Shown: one piece after another, positions 2,811 through 54,630 of the stretch
Layout of the letters: every line of letters starts with the position of its first letter
Numbering within the stretch: the stretch's first letter is position 1
Assembly (NCBI GenBank): GCA_977020255.1
Contig: CDROCS010000001.1
Span: 434,001 to 498,000, forward strand
Length of the DNA: 64,000 nucleotides
Source: Obrimoposthia wandeli
Taxonomy: Eukaryota
Reading direction: 5' to 3'
Position numbers and translations under genes: made by a program
The notes under the pieces: model-generated
The model's database searches: none
Told to the model about the DNA's origin: nothing
The model's input: the letters and a program-made list of their open reading frames with translations, nothing else

Positions 2811-5800
2811 AGTATAAATAAAACGTAAAGGGGCTATTTTAATTTTGAATCTGTATTCATTTATGATTCATGTCCAGTTCTTCTCGTAGAAAAAAAAGAA
2901 TAGTAAATCATCTTTCAACCTCTTGGTATAAATCGTTTTAAAAATAAAATTCGCAATGGGTCGAATAATGTGATGATTTGTGGATTTCATGAATATACAA
3001 GGTCCGGTAAAAAGAACGTATATATATATATATATCAGAATATGATATTTATTTTTAATTTTACTGTATACAAAAAGGCAGATATTATTTCTGGTATTAA
3101 AATATTCAGGGGTGACGGATGAAGACGTTGAAATGATGGTGAGTCTTCGATTGAGTTTGAACAAATGGATGTTAATTTTGTAGGTTTTGAAAAAAATATA
3201 TTTCTGATTAAATATTTTATTTGTGTGTTTAGTTAGGAGAGAATTCCCCTTTTTTCGTCTAGTAACGTGCACACTTCAACTAAACACTGGATTTTTTATT
3301 TTATTTTCAAATAAAATGATTTTTCACATTTCGACACAAGTACCCTATATTCCATACGTTATAGTTCCCGATTCTTACAGTGTTTCCGTTTTATTGACCA
3401 CAAAAATCGGATTAACCCTAATTTAATAAAAAATCATTTTTTACATAACAATAAAATAAAAATAAAATAAAAATAAGATCGATACCTGAGAGAAGAGAGT
3501 GTCACATGCAGTGGAAAATCCCAGATCAATAGTGACTCCAAACACGTTGATGACCTACATAATGGTTGAGCTTGTAAGTCACGTGAGTTTACAAATAATT
3601 GCAATAATATACACGTTACATAATTAATTTAATCAGCTACACTGGAGAACAAAGCTTATATTACATTAATTCTTTTTTGGTGTGGGGAATTCAAATTTAC
3701 AATTTCTTATTTTGCAAATCTACAGTTGATTTTTTATGAAATGTAAACGCCTCTTGGTCCTTTTAGAAACATTAAGGTCAACCAGTTGTAAAATGAGACT
3801 AAAACAACTGTATGATCAACATTTTTATTTATTTATCCACAAAATGCGTGTGGGCATCACAATATACATGGAAATTGAAAAATGAATTAGATAAACTTAT
3901 CAGTTTACTGAGTTCAGAGGGAATTGAGTTTGGCACTCCCTTTGTAACCAATATCGGAAAAGGTCACAGCATTCTAGAAGCAGAACTCCATAGTTATTTG
4001 GCTTTTTACTACCAATAAAGGTTGTATAATTGCATAACCCTGACAAAGTTCTCGTCAAGTAGCAGGTCATAGAACTTTAATAGAAATAAATTTTTATTGA
4101 ATTTGCTTAAATACGAAAATACCTGAGCAGGGATTTATCTGTAAATTTAACTAAAATACATTATCGCTGATAAATGTTTAATTCCTAAAAGATAATGTGA
4201 AATTGACGAAGTTTTTGCCATCTGTCAGGGAAAAAATACTTCCTTCTAATCTATTTAATGAATTGTCATATTAAGTGAGAAAAATCTCAGTGAATAAAAT
4301 AAAATATATCCTACGTCACTGAAACGTAGAGAAAACAAAAACACATTTTGACGAATCATTGTAATATTATGAGTGCTTATCAATTATTAAATAATTCATG
4401 GTTTCCAGTACCAAAACCCTAAGCTAACGCGTAAAAAACGAAATTTAAAAATCAAATGCGAATATACAATAGGAATAATTACGTTTAACGGGTTATGTGC
4501 AGAAAAATACGATTATGTATAGATTATAAATAAAATTGTATATAACTTTTAAACATTTGATTGTTTCCGAAATTTGTTTGTAACTTGCTTTAAAAAATCA
4601 TGCCTTCCAGATATGGTTTTAGCCTGTCTCCCCGTTGATAAGTTTGTAAAAAAACATATAAAAATTGATAATTTAGTTCTTTTAAATAGTTTCATAACTT
4701 TATTCTGAAAACTCTTTTGAAAACAATTTTAGCTGAACTCTAGACCTTATGTCACCCTTATCAAAATATCAGTTACGTTGTGAACTTTTTAAGCGAAAAT
4801 AAAAAATTATAAATTTGCTAATCATATATATTATTAGAATTTAAAATACTATAACAAAAATTGATTTATCCATCCAAAATTCTCTTTTAGTTTTCTTGAT
4901 TTTTCTTTTATTTATTATAACCATTAGAATGCCTTTAATAATTTATAGAAAAATATCTCAAAATCCCGATGAGATGTACGAGATGTGAATAACATTTTCG
5001 GGATAAGCAACACATTTAGACTAGAAAAATGCTATGACGTTAAAGGGACGAAATAAAAGTTATTATGTTATACACAGTGTTTCTTATTCAAACAAATCCA
5101 TTTATAGATTTCTATAATACGTTTTAATTTTTTCGAGAGCAAATTGATTATATAATTATTTACTGAGATAAGCGCTGTATCGCAACGTATTTGCAGGCTG
5201 TGTAGCGACCTCGCCGTGGTTGTAGAGATTGCAACAATTAAAATAATCTCTTCCAAATGCCCGCCTCCATCTATTATTTGTCGTGATGCGGTAACTATTT
5301 TTAGTAGCACAATTCCCCATGTGTCGTCTGGCCAGGTTTGATGTAATCAATAATCCAGACTATGCGTCTCCATATAATCACATCAGAAACTCCCCTATCG
5401 TTGTTCGAGGTGGGATGCGAGTTTGTTGACAGATTCCTATCGAATATTTACCCAACTCCGTCCTGGATTGTGGTGAGGTATCGCGATATGGACCGAGGAG
5501 GGGGAACGTGGCCCGAATTACGACTCACCGACTTCGAGTCAGCATTCGAAAGTTATATTCGGTTAAAATGAAGTTGACGAAAAAAATCGTTTGATTATAC
5601 CGAGTTTTGGTATATATAGAACGGAATTAAATCATGAGTTGAATTTTCTTTAAAAATATAGGGCTCTAATTTTAAATGCGTGCTAAACATTTGCAAAAAT
5701 TATTTTTCACATCATTTTGAAATTGAAATATTTTCAATAAAATAAATATAGTTAATTAATTAAACATTTTTCTAGCATTTCTTTGGTGTAAATTCAAACT

Positions 5801-43134: not shown

Positions 43135-43611
43135 ATGTTAACAAATATTAATTATAAAGAAATTTGATTAGATGATGTAACCAAATTAAAAGTTCGAACA
43201 CGACCAGAACAATACGTTTATAAAGCCAAAGATTATTCAATACTTATTTTTAGAAATAAGAAATGCAGGATTATGGGATGTAAGGTTCCTATTAAAAATA
43301 TTTCTTACCCTTTAAGAATAAATATACTCAGTATTCAATCAATTACGGTATGTGAAAATTTAGATCAAAGTATCAATCTATTTAAATTATGGAATGTGTT
43401 ACGTAATAAATGTTCATTTGACCCTGAGGTTTTCCCAGGTTTTAGATTAAATATTTTCAATCCATTGTGTGTGAATATTTTCACATCTGGAAAGGTCGTA
43501 ATCTTAGGTCTTAGAAATTTAGATTTTCACAACCAAGTTAACGATATCATGACATACATTAATAAAAATAATATAAATACGAAAGAATTTCTAATTAAAT
43601 CATTCAATTAA
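43135..43611 (+). CDS. TBP (TATA-binding protein)-like protein, two repeats, one premature TGA at 43165
   Basis: Repeat 1: LTNINY...LIFRNKKCRIMGCK. Repeat 2: IQSITVCENLDQSINLFKL..SFDPEVFPGFRLNIFNPLCVNIFTSGKVVILGLR, compared with TBP [54 protein letters not shown]. Confidence 0.85.
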
Positions 43612-49266: not shown

Positions 49267-50303
49267 TATTTTATTTTAATATATAATTTATGTTATTTAA
49301 ATAAATTTTACCATATTTCTTTAGATGCGTAAGCCTGGGAAAACTTTAGACTAAATTTTCACATAGAATAGTGTGTGTTATTACGTAATACATTCCTTAA
49401 CTGATAAGAGTGAACTTTAGCTTAAATTTTCACATAGAATAATTGATTGAATACTATATAATTTCTTAATTTATGCCAAATCTAACCCTTAACTTGTGAA
49501 CGACCATAAAATTTTTACATGAATAAACTCGTAATATGTTGACGAATACAACCATGTACTTGAAACTATGAAATTCCAACTTTTTTTAACCCTTCATCTA
49601 TGGACGACCATACCTATATGGATGAATTCGTCTTCTAAAGATGATTACAACCATGTATTCAAACCTTGACATTTAAAACTTGATTTGGTCTATATCGCGA
49701 CCTCTTCATATATGACCGACCATACTTTATGAGTGACTTCGTCTTCTAAAGATGATTACAACCATGTACTAAAACCTTGATATTTTAATTTTTTTTTTTT
49801 TAGTCCGACCCTTTGACCTATGGACGACCACAACCCTTTAGATGTGATGGCCAACCATAGTTGACCTCAATTATACCTTCAAAGTTTCAAGTCAAAACTG
49901 AGTCCGACCCTTTGATTTATGGACGACCACAACCCCTTGGGTATGTTGGCCGACCATAAGTGGTCATGACCATACCTTCAAACCTTCAAGTCAAAACTGA
50001 GTCCGACCCTTTGACCTATGGACGACCACAACCCCTTGGGTATGTTGGCCGACCATAGGTGGTCATGACCATACCTTCAAACCTTCATAACCTTTTTGAG
50101 CCAAACCCTTATGGTGTGGCAAGACACCCCTATGGTGAGGCAACATATACCCTATGGTGTGACACCCTTATGGTGTGACATTTCTATGGTGTGACACCCT
50201 TGTGGTGTGACACCCTTTAACTTGGTGTGCGCACACCACCCTTTAACTTGATGTGCGCACACAGGGGGGGTCAAGTGATCTAGACTCCATCCTTCTACCT
50301 ACT
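49267..50303 (-). repeat. Maverick right TIR with three ~99-bp and several ~17-bp internal repeats
   Basis: Units starting agtccgaccctttga at ~49802, 49901 and 50000. acaccc.tatggtgt units at 50105-50215. Confidence 0.93.
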
Positions 50304-50336
50304 ATCGTTCTCCACGCCATCTTGGATTTAACTACA

Positions 50337-50348
50337 AGCTATTTCGGC
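50337..50348 (+). promoter_or_regulatory. Putative primer-binding site complementary to nt 1-12 of tRNA-Phe(GAA)
   Basis: AGCTATTTCGGC directly after the LTR end. Its reverse complement GCCGAAATAGCT is the 5' end of human/Drosophila-type tRNA-Phe. Confidence 0.7.
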
Positions 50349-50349
50349 T

Positions 50350-51032
50350 ATGAAGGAATTGGAGACCATCAGCATTTTCGATAGGATGTCGAATGTGGAT
50401 GAGTGGATTATTGAGATCAAATTGAAGGCCGATCTGCTTGGACTGGAGAAGAAATTAAGTTCAATTATTCCGCTGAGAATGAAAGGTGAAGCCTTAATGA
50501 TGTTTACGAATTTAGAAGAAGACAAAAAGAAGGATGCAGAATCAATTATGAAGCGATTAAGAGATACCTATGGGATGGGTCAGCTCGAAGCGTTCAAGCG
50601 ATTCAGTCAAAGGAAGTGGCACCTCGGAGAATCAGTCGATCGGTTCGCGTCGGAATTGAAAAGTTTAGCATCAAAGATTGGTAGGGGAGATAACATTGTA
50701 AAACTAGCGCTAGTCGCTGGCCTGCCTTCAGACACTTCAGAAGCTCTGGAAATTTCGATGAAGTGTGGAAACTGTTCCTTAGAGCAAGTTATAGCTGAAA
50801 TCCGGACTAGGATGACAAAACAAATTGGAATTGAAGGTATCTTCCAAGTTGGAGCTGTCGCAGTTCATCATAGAAAAAGAATAATTAATTCAGGAATCAA
50901 ATGCTTCCGATGTGGAGATGAAGGCCATGTTCTAGAAACTGCTATGTGGAAGAAAAACGCAGATGCTACATATGTTATATAGTTGGTCACTTGGCGCCAT
51001 TATGTCTCAAACGAGAATCAAAAAACCACTAA
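50350..51032 (+). pseudogene. gag with two CCHC knuckles (frameshift at ~50930)
   Basis: CFRCGDEGHV/RNC and CYICYIVGHLAPLC, ending at TAA 51030-51032. Confidence 0.85.
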
Positions 51033-53960
51033 GGGAGTCCGTATGTGCCAGCAGCTCTCCCAATGATAAGGCGTATATTCCAACTGTCATCATCAATGTT
51101 GGAACTAAAGCTTTGAAAGCAATGGCTGATACTGGATGTTCGAGATCTATTCTTTCGGATGCGTTGACAGTCAAAGAATTAATCTCAAATTTTGATCATC
51201 ACATTAATTAATGAACGGAAAAAGTGTAAATTCGAGGAAGTGCATGGAATGTGAAGTTAATTTAAATGGACGTAAAATTCGACTAAATTGCATCGTTTCT
51301 CGTATAGTACCTGGCTATGACATGTTGTTGGGAATGGATGCTGTCAATATACTTGGTGGAATTTGGGTAAGTGGTGATGGAAAGAATGTTAAGTTTGGCC
51401 AATTCACTGATGTATGTGTGGTATCAGATTCATCAAATCCGGTTGGAGTTCATTATCATGTGAATGTGCTTCCGGTCAAACGGTTCTCTTTAGAACCAAC
51501 AATTGATTGTGCGATGGAAGAAATAGTTGGATGTGGTTCCACAGTGAATAGTACATTCAAGTCAAAGGATGAAACTTGTGTACATGAAAGAGGAATGAAG
51601 AATCCCATTCAGGGAGAAGTCGGGGATGTCGTGGATAAGGATTTTCATGCAAAGTTCGAGAATGGAAGATGGATCGCGAGATGGCAATGGAAAGAAGGAA
51701 TCGTGAAGCCAGCTCTACAGAACCAGGTGAGTCAATATCGGGTAAAGAACGAGATACTAGATCAATTTGAAGAAGAGATTGAAGAATGGATAGAACAAGG
51801 TTGGCTGAGAAAGTATGATGGTGAGCACACTGGTATAATACCTCTCGGCCGTTCTACAGCAAAACAAAGGAAAGGTTCGTCCTGTGATGGATTACCGAGA
51901 GCTTAACGATTATGTTTCAAGCCATACAGCTCAAAGGGAAGTATGCGGCGAAAAGCTGAGAGAATGGAGGAGATTGGGAGACAACTTGAGCATTGTGGAT
52001 TTAAGGAAGGCTTATCTACAAATCCATATTGACCCAACTTTGTGGAAGTATCAGGTTGTAGTTTACAAAGGAGTTAAATACTGTTTAACGCGTCTTGGTT
52101 TTGAACTCAACGTAGCTCCAAAGATTATGTCAGCAATCGTAAGGAAGGTTTTGTCAATGGATCAGACGGTGGAAAGTGAAACAGATTCTTACGTAGATGA
52201 TATAGTTGTTAATAAAGAGGTAGTATCTACTGAAGAGGTTATCAATATGTTATTAAAGTACGGTTTAGAATTGAAGCAGCCAGAAAAGCTGAATGGTGGT
52301 AGAGTGCTGGGACTGCGAATTCATCAAAACCAAAATGTGATGGTATGGAAGCGTGACAATATACTGGCTAAAGTGAATGACAATTTAACGCGAAGGCAAA
52401 TGTTTTCTCATTGCGGTCAGATGATTGGACACTTTCCCAAAGCTGGATGGTTGAGACCGGCGTGTAGTTATTTGAAAAGATTGACAAACGGTATTAATTG
52501 GGAAGACAACGTCGAGAGTAAAATCGTTGAAAAGCTGAAAGAAATTGAGGAACGTGTTTCGGAAAACGATCCTGTGCGAGGAGTCTAGAAAGTGACTGAT
52601 ACGATTGAAGGAACAGTATGGTGTGATGCTAGCAGTCTCGCAATGGGAATCGTAGTGGAAATTGATGGTTCGGTAGTTGAAGACTTCAGTTGGTTGCGGA
52701 AGGAAGATGAGTCCTCTCATATCAATTTGGCAAAGTTAGAAGCAGTTGTCAAAGGACTTAATTGTGCGATCAAATGGAGGCTGTCGCGAATTCTTGTTTA
52801 TACAGATTCGTCTACGGTCCGTGGCTGGGTAAAGTCAATTACATCTGGAGACAAACGAGTAAAACGCATAGTCTTGGATCGGCATTATCGCATAGGCGAC
52901 TGAATCTATTGAAAACCATAATAGAAGAATGCAGACTAACTGTTAATATCAGGCTAGTAAAGTCAGCAGGAAACAAAGCTGATGAGCTTACCAGAGTGCC
53001 CCAAAAATGGCTCAATCGTGCAAGCGTGGGATGCAGTAGCGTAATCGGCAATGAAGGAGAAATATTGGCAGTACACAACCTGAATAATCTAAAGTGTCAG
53101 TATCCTGAACTCAATGTGAAACGAGAAGAAGTAGCAGCTGTCGTAGAACGCTGTTTTAAATGCAAAAGTATAGATCCAGCACCAATTCGCTGGGAACATG
53201 GTGAGTTATCAGTTGATGCGAATTGGAGTCGATTGGCCTGTGATGTAACCCATTATTTAGGGAAGTGTTACTTATCCATTATCGATTGTGGACCAAGCCG
53301 ATTCACAATATGAAAGTTGCTCAATGATGAGACACAGTATTCAGTGACTACCGCCATGACTGATGTCTTCAGAGAACGTGAGTTGTTGATGGATAATAGC
53401 CCAACCTTTAAGTCACGGCAATTTCACAATGCTTGTAGATCATGGAAGGTCAAGTGTGTGTTTCGATGTGCTTATCGACCATCAGGAAATGGGATAGTGG
53501 AACGTGTTCACATAACCATCAAACGAATGGCTACCAGAAGTGATGCAGATGTCCGTGACATAAGTTTTTGGTATAATGCTTCTCCGAAATGTAGTAACAA
53601 GGACCATTCTGTTCCCGTACGAGAACTGTTCACATACGAATGGCGACATCCAAACGTTGAACCAAAGTTGTCGACATTTCAAAACATTACAGGTTACAAC
53701 ATGGATCAGGCTGTATTTGTCAAACCTCCCAATGCGCGTTGCACATTAGTTTGGCCTAAGGGAGTAATTACTGGTTTGAGTGGAGCAACGCAGGTAGAAA
53801 TCGACGGAGTTCCTCGACACGTGGCCGACGTCAGACCGATTCCAATACCACTACCAGAACGGCCAGAGACAATTGCGGATGTATGAGAAGAAGAAGTCGC
53901 TTCCGATGATGCCAGAGAATGCCCATACGGCGACCGGCATATTTAGATGACTATGTGTGA
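51020..53960 (+). pseudogene. pol (PR, RT, RNase H, IN), several frameshifts and stops
   Basis: ADTGC (PR); DYRELN, DLRKAYLQ, YVDD (RT); WCDAS..HINLAKL (RH); CFKC, ACDVT, MDN, GIVER (IN). Confidence 0.93.
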
Positions 53961-54630
53961 TCTAGAGATCAAGGGGGATTGTTGTTGGATGTTTGTTTTA
54001 ATATTCGACAATCCGTAAAACGGCAGAATTTGAATATATCGTTCTCCACGCCATCTTGGATTTAACTACAGTATTTATTCCTGTATATACATTTGATTCA
54101 CTGTAAATTAACTGAAAACTTAACTGTCATATAACTAAATCTATAATGTGACATATATAATTGATAACAATCTCGAGTGATCTTGTACAGAGAAAGAAAA
54201 TACATGATATCTCAATATTCTAGCTATTCACCTTTAATATTTATACTATTACATATATATAACTAAATAGATAAATTTAACAACTACACACAACTGTCAA
54301 CCCAACAAAAAGCCCGAAGTTAGAGAATCGATTATCACCAGCAATTAACCGATCTATTACTGCTATCCGCCAATTCCCACAGTGCAAGAACTCAAGGAGC
54401 GGGTAAATAATATAAATAGGAATCAAAATTGATTCCCCAATCACACACAGAAATTTTGAGCTATACTTCTGAGACCACGGATCTGAGACCACGAAATCCG
54501 AGCAATACTTATGAGACCACATAAATCCGAGCCTCCAAGTCTGAGTTAAACTATTGGCGAGGAGTGTGCAGTGTCGAGTTTTGTGTCGTTGGAGACGTGT
54601 AGAGTTTGGACGTATTTCGTTTTATATTAA

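What the first reader, a model, noticed from the sequence alone, without database searches (positions are those of the whole stretch)
50331..50352. Gypsy primer-binding site complementary to the 5' end, not the 3' end, of tRNA-Phe
Seen: the LTR end (..TTTAACTACA, fixed by identity with the 3' LTR) is followed with no gap by AGCTATTTCGGC, then T-ATG of gag. There is no TGG-type PBS. Established: tRNA-Phe(GAA) of human and Drosophila begins GCCGAAATAGCTCAG, so this is a 12/12 complement of nt 1-12, extending 5 nt beyond the acceptor stem, with nt 12 adjacent to the LTR. Known priming modes are tRNA 3' ends, anticodon-cleaved half tRNA-iMet (copia, Ty5) and Tf1 self-priming by an 11-nt 5' piece cut by RNase H. 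Inference: priming by a 12-nt 5' tRNA fragment, effectively Tf1-like cleavage in trans. I am not aware of this mode being described. The host tRNA-Phe is not in the window.
Basis: partly seen in the sequence, partly recalled or inferred. Interest (0 to 1): 0.88.

Follow-up and report, generated by a model that had tools for sequence, protein, structure and literature searches.

The report
Retrotransposon primer site matching tRNA-Phe 5' end
A very small, high-copy animal LTR retrotransposon carries, where the primer-binding site should be, a 12-base perfect complement of the first 12 bases of the host's own tRNA-Phe; relatives in other hosts keep the same site, which points to a way of starting reverse transcription that I could not find described.

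Summary
Window 50303-54070 holds a degraded copy of a compact LTR retrotransposon. The family is 3.87 kb long, with 91-nt LTRs, 5-bp target duplications and more than 2,000 candidate copies.

Directly after the LTR's terminal ACA come AGCTATTTCGGC, one T, then the gag ATG. The host's tRNA-Phe(GAA), a 24-gene tandem array, begins GCCGAAATAGCT. That is a 12/12 complement, bounded by the LTR edge on one side and by tRNA nt 1 on the other.

- **Relatives:** six lineages from other sources (43-55% Pol identity) keep a 12-mer at the same spot, AGCTA-NNN-[C/T]GGC. The flanks are not conserved. The variable bases fall at acceptor-stem positions 4-6, and two variants match real tRNA-Phe genes found elsewhere.
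- **Sister clade:** it carries the ordinary TGGTGCCGAAACC, the complement of the 3' end of the same tRNA.
- **Absent:** no TGG-type site and no self-complementary LTR sequence.

Best reading, inferred and not shown: the first 12 nt of tRNA-Phe, cut after U12, prime minus-strand synthesis, like Tf1 but in trans. My literature searches found no description of this mode.

The "Gypsy" label is doubtful. The host match of the variant sites was verified only in this genome.

The parts
50303..50336 (+). Remnant of the 5' LTR: the last 34 of 91 nt, ending ...TTTAACTACA
   Evidence: Identical to 54037-54070. All other genomic copies start matching the query at this base. Full 91-nt LTRs with 5-bp target duplications are seen in other copies.
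50337..50348 (+). Putative primer-binding site AGCTATTTCGGC, a perfect complement of nt 1-12 of the host tRNA-Phe(GAA)
   Evidence: The predicted RNA duplex is -20.6 kcal/mol. The site is kept in copies and, as AGCTA-NNN-[C/T]GGC, in six relatives.
50350..50982 (+). gag ORF of 210 aa, starting 1 nt after the 12-mer
   Evidence: There is no Pfam hit in this copy. gag of relatives carries a weak zf-CCHC hit.
51211..53886 (+). pol, broken into five ORFs by stops and frameshifts; domains in order: protease, RT, DUF7047, RNase H (RVT_3 / PF00075 type), H2C2 zinc finger, integrase core
53958..53971 (+). Small hairpin TGATCTAGAGATCA directly 5' of the polypurine run
   Evidence: Kept in relatives, with one compensatory change in L118.
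53971..53978 (+). Polypurine tract AAGGGGGA, 1 nt before the 3' LTR
   Evidence: The same motif is found in L052, L054 and L060.
53980..54070 (+). Complete 3' LTR, 91 nt, TGTTGTTGG...AACTACA

Best explanation
The 12-mer is the element's primer-binding site, and it pairs with the 5' end of the host's tRNA-Phe(GAA) rather than the 3' end. tRNA-Phe is taken into the particle. Its acceptor stem and the start of its D stem are unwound, as Gag chaperones do for ordinary primers. Nucleotides 1-12 then anneal to AGCUAUUUCGGC right next to U5. A cut between U12 and C13, at the U5-side end of the RNA:RNA duplex, leaves a 12-nt RNA whose 3'-OH faces the last base of the LTR, and reverse transcriptase extends it into U5-R. 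The most likely cutter is the element's own RNase H, as in Tf1; a host nuclease is the alternative. Later, plus-strand strong-stop DNA copies the 12-nt primer to its natural 5' end, which regenerates a 12-nt site without needing a modified-base stop. Shown: the complementarity, its exact boundaries, its conservation, and the link to tRNA-Phe across the clade. Inferred: packaging, annealing, the cut and the extension.
For: - **Exact match:** a 12/12 complement to the host's own tRNA-Phe, bounded by the LTR edge and by tRNA nt 1. LTR edges are fixed by 5-bp target duplications.
- **Conservation in relatives:** six relatives at 43-55% Pol identity (L053, L054/55, L056, L057/58, L060, L118/119) have, directly after the LTR end (ACA in five lineages, ATA in L060) and 1-80 nt before the gag ATG, a 12-mer with the pattern AGCTA-NNN-[C/T]GGC. 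Neighbouring LTR and leader sequences are unrelated.
- **Position of the variation:** changes fall only at tRNA positions 4-6, in the middle of the acceptor stem. G1-C3, A7 and U8-U12 are fixed.
- **Variants match real tRNAs:** GCCGGGATAGCT and GCCTAGATAGCT are the 5' ends of real tRNA-Phe(GAA) genes found in other public data. In this genome the only GCC-type tRNA-Phe is the AAA variant, which its element matches.
- **Sister clade:** two lineages of a clade with 98/98 support carry, 2 nt after the LTR, TGGTGCCGAAACC (L120) and TGGTACCGAAACCCG (L059). These are complements of the 3' end of tRNA-Phe. The wider clade is therefore tied to this one tRNA.
- **Alternatives absent:** no canonical TGGTGCC site occurs anywhere in the subclade's contigs apart from one stray hit. 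No complement of 8 nt or more of the 12-mer occurs on the same strand.
- **Enzyme intact:** the RNase H DEDD residues and the RT YxDD motif are invariant in 12 relatives.
Against: - No experiment or read data shows a 12-nt tRNA-Phe piece joined to cDNA. No RNA runs exist for this organism.
- The host match of the variant sites is verified only in this genome. The hosts of the other contigs are unknown. The GGG-variant tRNA-Phe genes I found may come from plants or mosses rather than from the elements' hosts. If those hosts have the AAA tRNA-Phe, their sites would carry 2-3 central mismatches.
- A 12-bp primer duplex is short, though Tf1 works with 11.
- Known abundant 5' tRNA fragments are 14 nt or longer and would have an unpaired 3' end here.
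- All copies examined in this genome are broken, so current activity is not shown.
Confidence: 0.65

Rival explanations
1. The 12-mer does bind the 5' end of tRNA-Phe, but only to capture or position the tRNA, or it serves as another cis signal such as packaging or dimerisation. On this reading minus-strand synthesis is primed by something else not yet recognised.
For: Conservation and tRNA complementarity show constraint and pairing, not priming. Retroelements are known to make extra tRNA contacts outside the primer site (Ty3 bipartite site, HIV-1 contacts; established knowledge).
Against: The 12-mer sits exactly where the primer site must be, flush with U5. No other candidate site exists: there is no TGG site, no complement of 8 nt or more to the tRNA-Phe 3' end in three copies, no TGGTGCC in relatives, and no self-complement. 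In the window family only 13 nt separate the LTR from the gag ATG.
Confidence: 0.17
2. The primer is a ready-made host 5' tRNA-Phe fragment, produced by a host nuclease before packaging. It is not a full tRNA cut by the element's RNase H after annealing.
For: 5' tRNA fragments are common in animal cells (reviews). The sequence data cannot tell who makes the cut.
Against: Described 5' fragments are 14-35 nt long and end in the D loop or the anticodon loop, so their 3' ends would not pair with the LTR's last bases (ACA versus the CUG that would be needed). The cut predicted here lies at the end of the RNA:RNA duplex, as in Tf1, which points to the element's enzyme. This rival is a variant of the main reading and differs only in one step.
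Confidence: 0.12
3. Tf1-like self-priming: the 5' end of the element's own transcript folds back on the site.
For: The site lacks TGG, is 12 nt long and abuts U5, as in Tf1.
Against: No complement of 6 nt or more of the site exists in the 91-nt LTR. None of 8 nt or more exists anywhere on the same strand of eight contigs from six lineages.
Confidence: 0.02
4. Chance resemblance, or an inert relic of tRNA read-through during an ancestral replication cycle.
For: Read-through of plus-strand synthesis into the primer tRNA would place the reverse complement of a whole tRNA next to the LTR. Its last 12 nt are exactly this 12-mer, so a deletion could leave it behind. This may be how the site arose.
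Against: A relic would not stay 9/12 invariant at 45-55% protein identity while all flanks diverge, nor vary only at tRNA positions 4-6. The chance of a 12/12 match at this exact junction is about 1e-6 to 1e-5.
Confidence: 0.03

Closest known systems
Tf1 / sushi-group self-priming (S. pombe Tf1; Levin 1995, cited in PMC7472051 ref. 19; described in PMC5006619)
   Same: There is no TGG site. A short (11-12 nt) RNA:RNA duplex lies flush with U5. The primer is the 5'-terminal piece of a longer RNA and must be cut at the end of the duplex. Plus-strand strong-stop can run to the primer's natural 5' end.
   Different: Here the RNA is a host tRNA acting in trans, not the element's own transcript. No LTR complement exists. 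The element is not a chromovirus and lacks the Gypsy-type RNase H signature.
copia / 1731 / Ty5 priming by a cleaved 5' part of initiator tRNA-Met (established knowledge)
   Same: A 5' portion of a host tRNA, produced by cleavage, serves as the primer.
   Different: In those elements the site pairs with the 3' end of a fragment of about 39 nt (the anticodon-stem region) of tRNA-iMet. Here it pairs with the extreme 5' end (nt 1-12) of tRNA-Phe, and the cut would lie in the D stem.
Canonical tRNA-Phe 3'-end primer sites (sister lineages L059 and L120 here; mouse IAP and some ERVs, from established knowledge)
   Same: The same tRNA species, and the same position next to the 5' LTR.
   Different: The opposite end of the tRNA. 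The canonical site starts TGG and lies 2 nt from the LTR. The site here starts AGCTA, lies 0 nt from the LTR and ends at tRNA nt 1.
Dictyostelid Skipper elements with a polypyrimidine stretch in place of the primer site (PMC5006619)
   Same: An LTR-element clade that lost the TGG site and for which non-canonical priming is proposed.
   Different: Skipper has no identified primer. Here a specific host RNA matches perfectly.

Membership tests
LTR retrotransposon with Ty3/Gypsy gene order (Metaviridae in the broad sense) | Direct LTRs ending TG...CA, with short target-site duplications | tested here: met
   91-nt LTRs, TGTTG...CTACA. Exact 5-bp duplications in 7 of 8 full copies.
LTR retrotransposon with Ty3/Gypsy gene order (Metaviridae in the broad sense) | pol order protease - RT - RNase H - integrase | tested here: met
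   Pfam hits in that order in copies and relatives.
LTR retrotransposon with Ty3/Gypsy gene order (Metaviridae in the broad sense) | Gypsy-type RT-linked RNase H (Pfam RT_RNaseH / RT_RNaseH_2) | tested here: not met
   0 of 12 relatives hit these models. All 12 hit DUF7047 and RVT_3, and 5 hit RNase_H PF00075.
LTR retrotransposon with Ty3/Gypsy gene order (Metaviridae in the broad sense) | RT closest to Ty3/Gypsy RTs | tested here: inconclusive
   In a profile search of solved structures, PR-RT is nearest foamy-virus and HIV RTs. Integrase is about equally near MMTV and Ty3. No reference phylogeny was possible with these tools.
BEL/Pao LTR retrotransposons | Pao-type protease (Peptidase_A17) and DUF5641 | tested here: not met
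   No hit in 12 relatives.
Canonical tRNA 3'-end-primed LTR elements | A site starting TGG, 0-5 nt after the LTR, complementary to a tRNA 3' end | tested here: not met
   No complement to the tRNA-Phe 3' end in the copies. No TGGTGCC in the subclade apart from one stray hit.
Tf1/sushi self-priming elements | Site complementary to the first bases of the element's own transcript, within the LTR | tested here: not met
Tf1/sushi self-priming elements | Primer released by an RNase H cut at the end of an 11-12-bp RNA:RNA duplex abutting U5 | not testable with these tools
   The geometry fits: a 12-bp duplex flush with the LTR. The RNase H DEDD residues are invariant. The cut itself needs biochemistry.
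copia/Ty5 half-tRNA priming | Site complementary to the anticodon-stem region of tRNA-iMet | tested here: not met
   The only significant complement is to nt 1-12 of tRNA-Phe.
Proposed: elements with a primer site for the tRNA-Phe 5' end | 12-mer flush with the LTR that is the exact complement of nt 1-12 of the host's tRNA-Phe | tested here: met
   Met for this genome.
Proposed: elements with a primer site for the tRNA-Phe 5' end | Site changes track the host's tRNA-Phe acceptor stem in other hosts | tested here: inconclusive
   The five site variants differ only at tRNA positions 4-6. The GGG and TAG variants exist as real tRNA-Phe genes. The hosts of the relatives could not be examined.
Proposed: elements with a primer site for the tRNA-Phe 5' end | The 12-nt tRNA piece is physically used as the primer | not testable with these tools
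   No RNA or raw-read runs exist for this organism.

The most novel reading that the evidence does not exclude
A widespread animal clade of ultra-compact (3.7-4.4 kb) LTR retroelements, with named hosts so far a cnidarian and an insect plus many environmental samples, starts reverse transcription from the first 12 nucleotides of tRNA-Phe, released by a cut in the D stem. It changed ends on the same packaged tRNA relative to a sister clade that uses the tRNA-Phe 3' end. That would be a fourth mode of minus-strand priming in LTR elements, after tRNA 3' ends, cleaved tRNA-iMet halves and self-priming.
Probability: 0.55. Interest if true: 0.9.

Novelty: new variant of a known kind. Interest (0 to 1): 0.8.

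Why it matters
How reverse transcription starts is a defining step of retroviruses and LTR elements, and only three modes are established. A site for the 5' end of a tRNA would add a fourth.

- It would show that an element can switch ends on the same tRNA.
- It would explain why standard annotation tools, which look for complements of tRNA 3' ends, report no primer site for this clade.
- It gives a possible biological use for very short 5' tRNA pieces.
- It predicts that host defences based on 3' tRNA fragments, which target ordinary primer sites, would miss these elements, while 5' fragments might target them.

The idea is directly testable by comparing host tRNA-Phe genes with resident elements, and by simple biochemistry.

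Tried and rejected
- **Self-priming.** No complement of the site occurs in the LTR or anywhere on the same strand in eight contigs. Rejected.
- **A second tRNA contact.** A 10-nt complement to tRNA-Phe nt 16-25 lies at element position about 809 in this family. It is absent from all relatives, and words of 10 nt or more arise in 35 of 200 shuffles. I treat it as chance.
- **A hidden canonical site.** TGGTGCC is absent from the subclade apart from one stray hit inside gag of L118 that does not fit.
- **The near-match at window 29996.** AGCTATTTCGTC is not next to an LTR end. Chance.
- **Expression or primer evidence from reads.** Only four runs hold the sequence, all as contigs and of unrecorded type, none on record as RNA. 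I therefore did not use read laying.
- **More relatives from IMG/VR.** None found.
- **Literature.** Nine searches and three papers read gave no report of a site for a tRNA 5' end. Searches for the variant tRNA 5' sequences as text found nothing. The library misses most subscription journals and cannot search phrases containing a prime sign, so absence is weak evidence.
- **More DNA from this genome.** I could not read other lineages of the clade in this genome and did not try to obtain them another way.
- **Direction of the switch.** The tree leaves the 5'-site lineages as an unresolved comb around the 3'-site clade, so 3'-to-5' is assumed from the general rule and not shown.

Full report
**What is in the window.** Reading 49900-50700 shows TTTAACTACA (50327-50336), AGCTATTTCGGC (50337-50348), a single T, and the ATG at 50350 that opens a 210-aa ORF. 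The stretch 50303-50336 is repeated exactly at 54037-54070.

Downstream ORF fragments carry DUF7047, an RNase H of the RVT_3 / PF00075 type, and the end of an integrase core. Before the second repeat lie a small hairpin and the purine run AAGGGGGA.

This is a degraded LTR retrotransposon of about 3.77 kb. Its 5' LTR is only a 34-nt remnant abutting tandem repeats.

**The family and the exact LTR edge.** A DNA search of the whole genome (1.35 Gb, 6,912 contigs) found 2,120 first-look candidates. Forty were scored, at 95-97% identity, and every one starts matching at window base 50303. A protein search found 3,127 candidates.

Twelve copies fetched with flanks give a 91-nt LTR, TGTTGTTGG...AACTACA, and full elements of 3.66-3.88 kb. 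Target-site duplications of 5 bp are exact in 7 of 8 full copies and 4/5 in the eighth.

The LTR/leader junction is therefore fixed independently of the window copy. The two LTRs of a copy differ at 1-8 of 91 positions, and every copy I read has stops, so the family is not young.

**The host tRNA.** The genome has 24 tandem tRNA-Phe(GAA) genes with a period of about 355 nt on contig C1316. The gene reads GCCGAAATAGCTCAGTTGGGAGAGCG...TTTTCGGCA.

No other GCC-type tRNA-Phe 5' end exists in this genome. The two other genomic hits to the Phe-type D-arm word ATAGCTCAGTTGGGAGAGCG begin GGGGCC and GGGGTT.

The 12-mer is thus the perfect complement of nt 1-12.
- On the LTR side it cannot extend: tRNA C13 would need G, and the LTR ends in A.
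- On the other side the tRNA ends.
- The predicted duplex is -20.6 kcal/mol.
- Of 42 5' junctions read (some loci overlap), 30 have the exact 12-mer followed by T and 4 more have it with another next base. The rest differ by one or two transitions.
- Five of the 42 share AGTTATTTCGGC, which would keep a G10-U wobble.

**Relatives elsewhere.** A full HMMER search with a 439-aa open piece of pol found 2,361 relatives. A second search listed about 900 Pols of roughly 900-1,000 aa, nearly all on contigs of 3.7-4.4 kb. Two have named hosts, Hydra vulgaris and the leafhopper Macrosteles quadrilineatus.

Atlas clusters with the same domains are eukaryotic, mostly arthropod.

I could fetch DNA for six lineages at 43-55% Pol identity. 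In each, directly after the LTR end (ACA in five lineages, ATA in L060) and 1-80 nt before the gag ATG, there is a 12-mer of the same pattern:

| Lineage | 12-mer | Reverse complement (tRNA sense) |
|---|---|---|
| window family, L057/58 | AGCTATTTCGGC | GCCGAAATAGCT |
| L053 | AGCTATCACGGC | GCCGTGATAGCT |
| L054/55, L060 | AGCTATCCCGGC | GCCGGGATAGCT |
| L056 | AGCTATCTAGGC | GCCTAGATAGCT |
| L118/119 | AGCTATCGCGGC | GCCGCGATAGCT |

The LTR ends and leaders around it are otherwise unrelated. Read as tRNA, all five variants are GCC[G/T]NN-A-TAGCT. The invariant part is G1-C3, A7 and U8-U12. The variable part is positions 4-6, in the middle of the acceptor stem.

**Do such tRNAs exist?**
- A scan of JGI metagenomes found 56 contigs with GCCGGGATAGCTCAGTTGGGAGAGC. 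ARAGORN calls them tRNA-Phe(GAA). Their 3' strand is TCACGGC.
- A scan of IMG/VR found one eukaryote-type tRNA-Phe(GAA) beginning GCCTAGATAGCT.

So three of the five site variants equal nt 1-12 of real tRNA-Phe genes.

The caveat is plain. Only for this genome do I know that element and tRNA share a host. The GGG tRNAs may come from plants or mosses.

**The sister clade.** Two more distant relatives with long gag-pol proteins (about 42% identity, also carrying DUF7047) have an ordinary site 2 nt after the LTR.
- L120 reads ...GCA TC TGGTGCCGAAACC.
- L059, with two identical LTRs of about 500 nt in a chromosome assembly, reads ...ACA TC TGGTACCGAAACCCG.

Both are complements of the 3' end of tRNA-Phe; L059 has one mismatch. 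In a maximum-likelihood tree these two fall in a clade of eight with 98/98 support, apart from all lineages with the 5'-type site. Those lineages form an unresolved comb.

The wider DUF7047 clade is thus tied to tRNA-Phe, and one part of it uses the other end. This makes a chance match or a different unknown primer very unlikely.

**Rivals tested.**
- **Tf1-type self-priming:** it needs a complement of the site at the transcript's 5' end. None of 6 nt or more exists in the 91-nt LTR, and none of 8 nt or more on the same strand of eight contigs.
- **A hidden canonical site:** absent.
- **A second contact to the D arm:** specific to this family and within chance.

**How it most likely works.** The geometry is that of Tf1: a 12-bp RNA:RNA duplex flush with U5, from which the primer must be freed by a cut at the U5-side end of the duplex, here between U12 and C13 of the tRNA.

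The clade's RNase H has all four DEDD residues invariant, as are the RT YxDD motif and the integrase HHCC and DDE residues.

Extension from U12 would copy the short U5-R. Plus-strand strong-stop would then copy the primer to its 5' end and recreate a 12-nt site. All of this is inference from sequence plus the known Tf1 and copia precedents.

A plausible origin is read-through of plus-strand synthesis over a whole primer tRNA, followed by a deletion. That would leave exactly these 12 bases next to the LTR.

**Classification.** The gene order is that of Ty3/Gypsy, but none of 12 relatives hits the Gypsy RNase H models or the Pao protease. All 12 have DUF7047 followed by a cellular-type RNase H.

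A profile search of solved structures puts PR-RT nearest foamy-virus and HIV RTs, and integrase nearest MMTV and Ty3. I therefore call it an LTR retrotransposon with Gypsy gene order whose superfamily placement is unsettled.

**Novelty.** Reviews and surveys I could read list tRNA 3' ends, self-priming, and unexplained cases such as Skipper; cleaved tRNA-iMet priming (copia, 1731, Ty5) I add from established knowledge. None mentions a site for a tRNA 5' end. The library is incomplete, so I rate this as a new variant of a known kind and not as certain novelty.

Noticed in passing
window 53958-53971; L054 about 3970-3983; L053 about 3753-3766; L118 about 3625-3637: A 5-bp hairpin (TGATC-loop-GATCA) sits directly before the polypurine run in all lineages. 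L118 has GAAC/GTTC, which is a compensatory change. It may help define the plus-strand primer.
   Followed up: partly
pol of the clade (window 51884-52903; P0001 residues 377-575): The RT is followed by DUF7047 and then a cellular or retrovirus-type RNase H (RVT_3 / PF00075, DEDD intact), not the Gypsy-type RNase H. This recalls the connection-plus-new-RNase-H layout of retroviruses. Whether DUF7047 is a degenerate RNase H was not tested.
   Followed up: partly
whole element; L041-L052: The element is extremely compact for an apparently autonomous LTR element: 3.87 kb, 91-nt LTRs that must hold U3, R and U5, and only 13 nt between the LTR and the gag ATG. Relatives sit on 3.7-4.4 kb contigs but can have longer LTRs (about 570 nt in L054, about 220 nt in L118).
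   Followed up: partly
G000 contig C1316:378.6-386.8 kb (L001-L010): tRNA-Phe(GAA) is present as a head-to-tail array of 24 genes with a period of about 355 nt (the four read in L001 are identical).
   Followed up: partly
window 49515-50262: Tandem repeats (99-nt units x3, 16-21-nt units x5, 26-nt units x2) directly abut the truncated 5' LTR. They replace its first 57 nt.
   Followed up: no
L019, L020 and three other junctions in G000: A sub-family carries AGTTATTTCGGC, which would pair G10 of the tRNA with U. It also shares LTR and gag variants, so the wobble was propagated. That suggests the site is inherited from the genomic RNA rather than reset from the primer.
   Followed up: no
L062-L117 (metagenome contigs): tRNA-Phe genes with the 5' strand GCCGGGA have the 3' strand TCACGGC, which gives a G5-A68 mismatch in the acceptor stem. 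The perfectly paired partner would be GCCGTGA, which is the variant implied by L053's site.
   Followed up: no
window 43135-43611: Another first-stage note places a Maverick/Polinton element a few kb upstream of this retrotransposon. I did not examine it.
   Followed up: no
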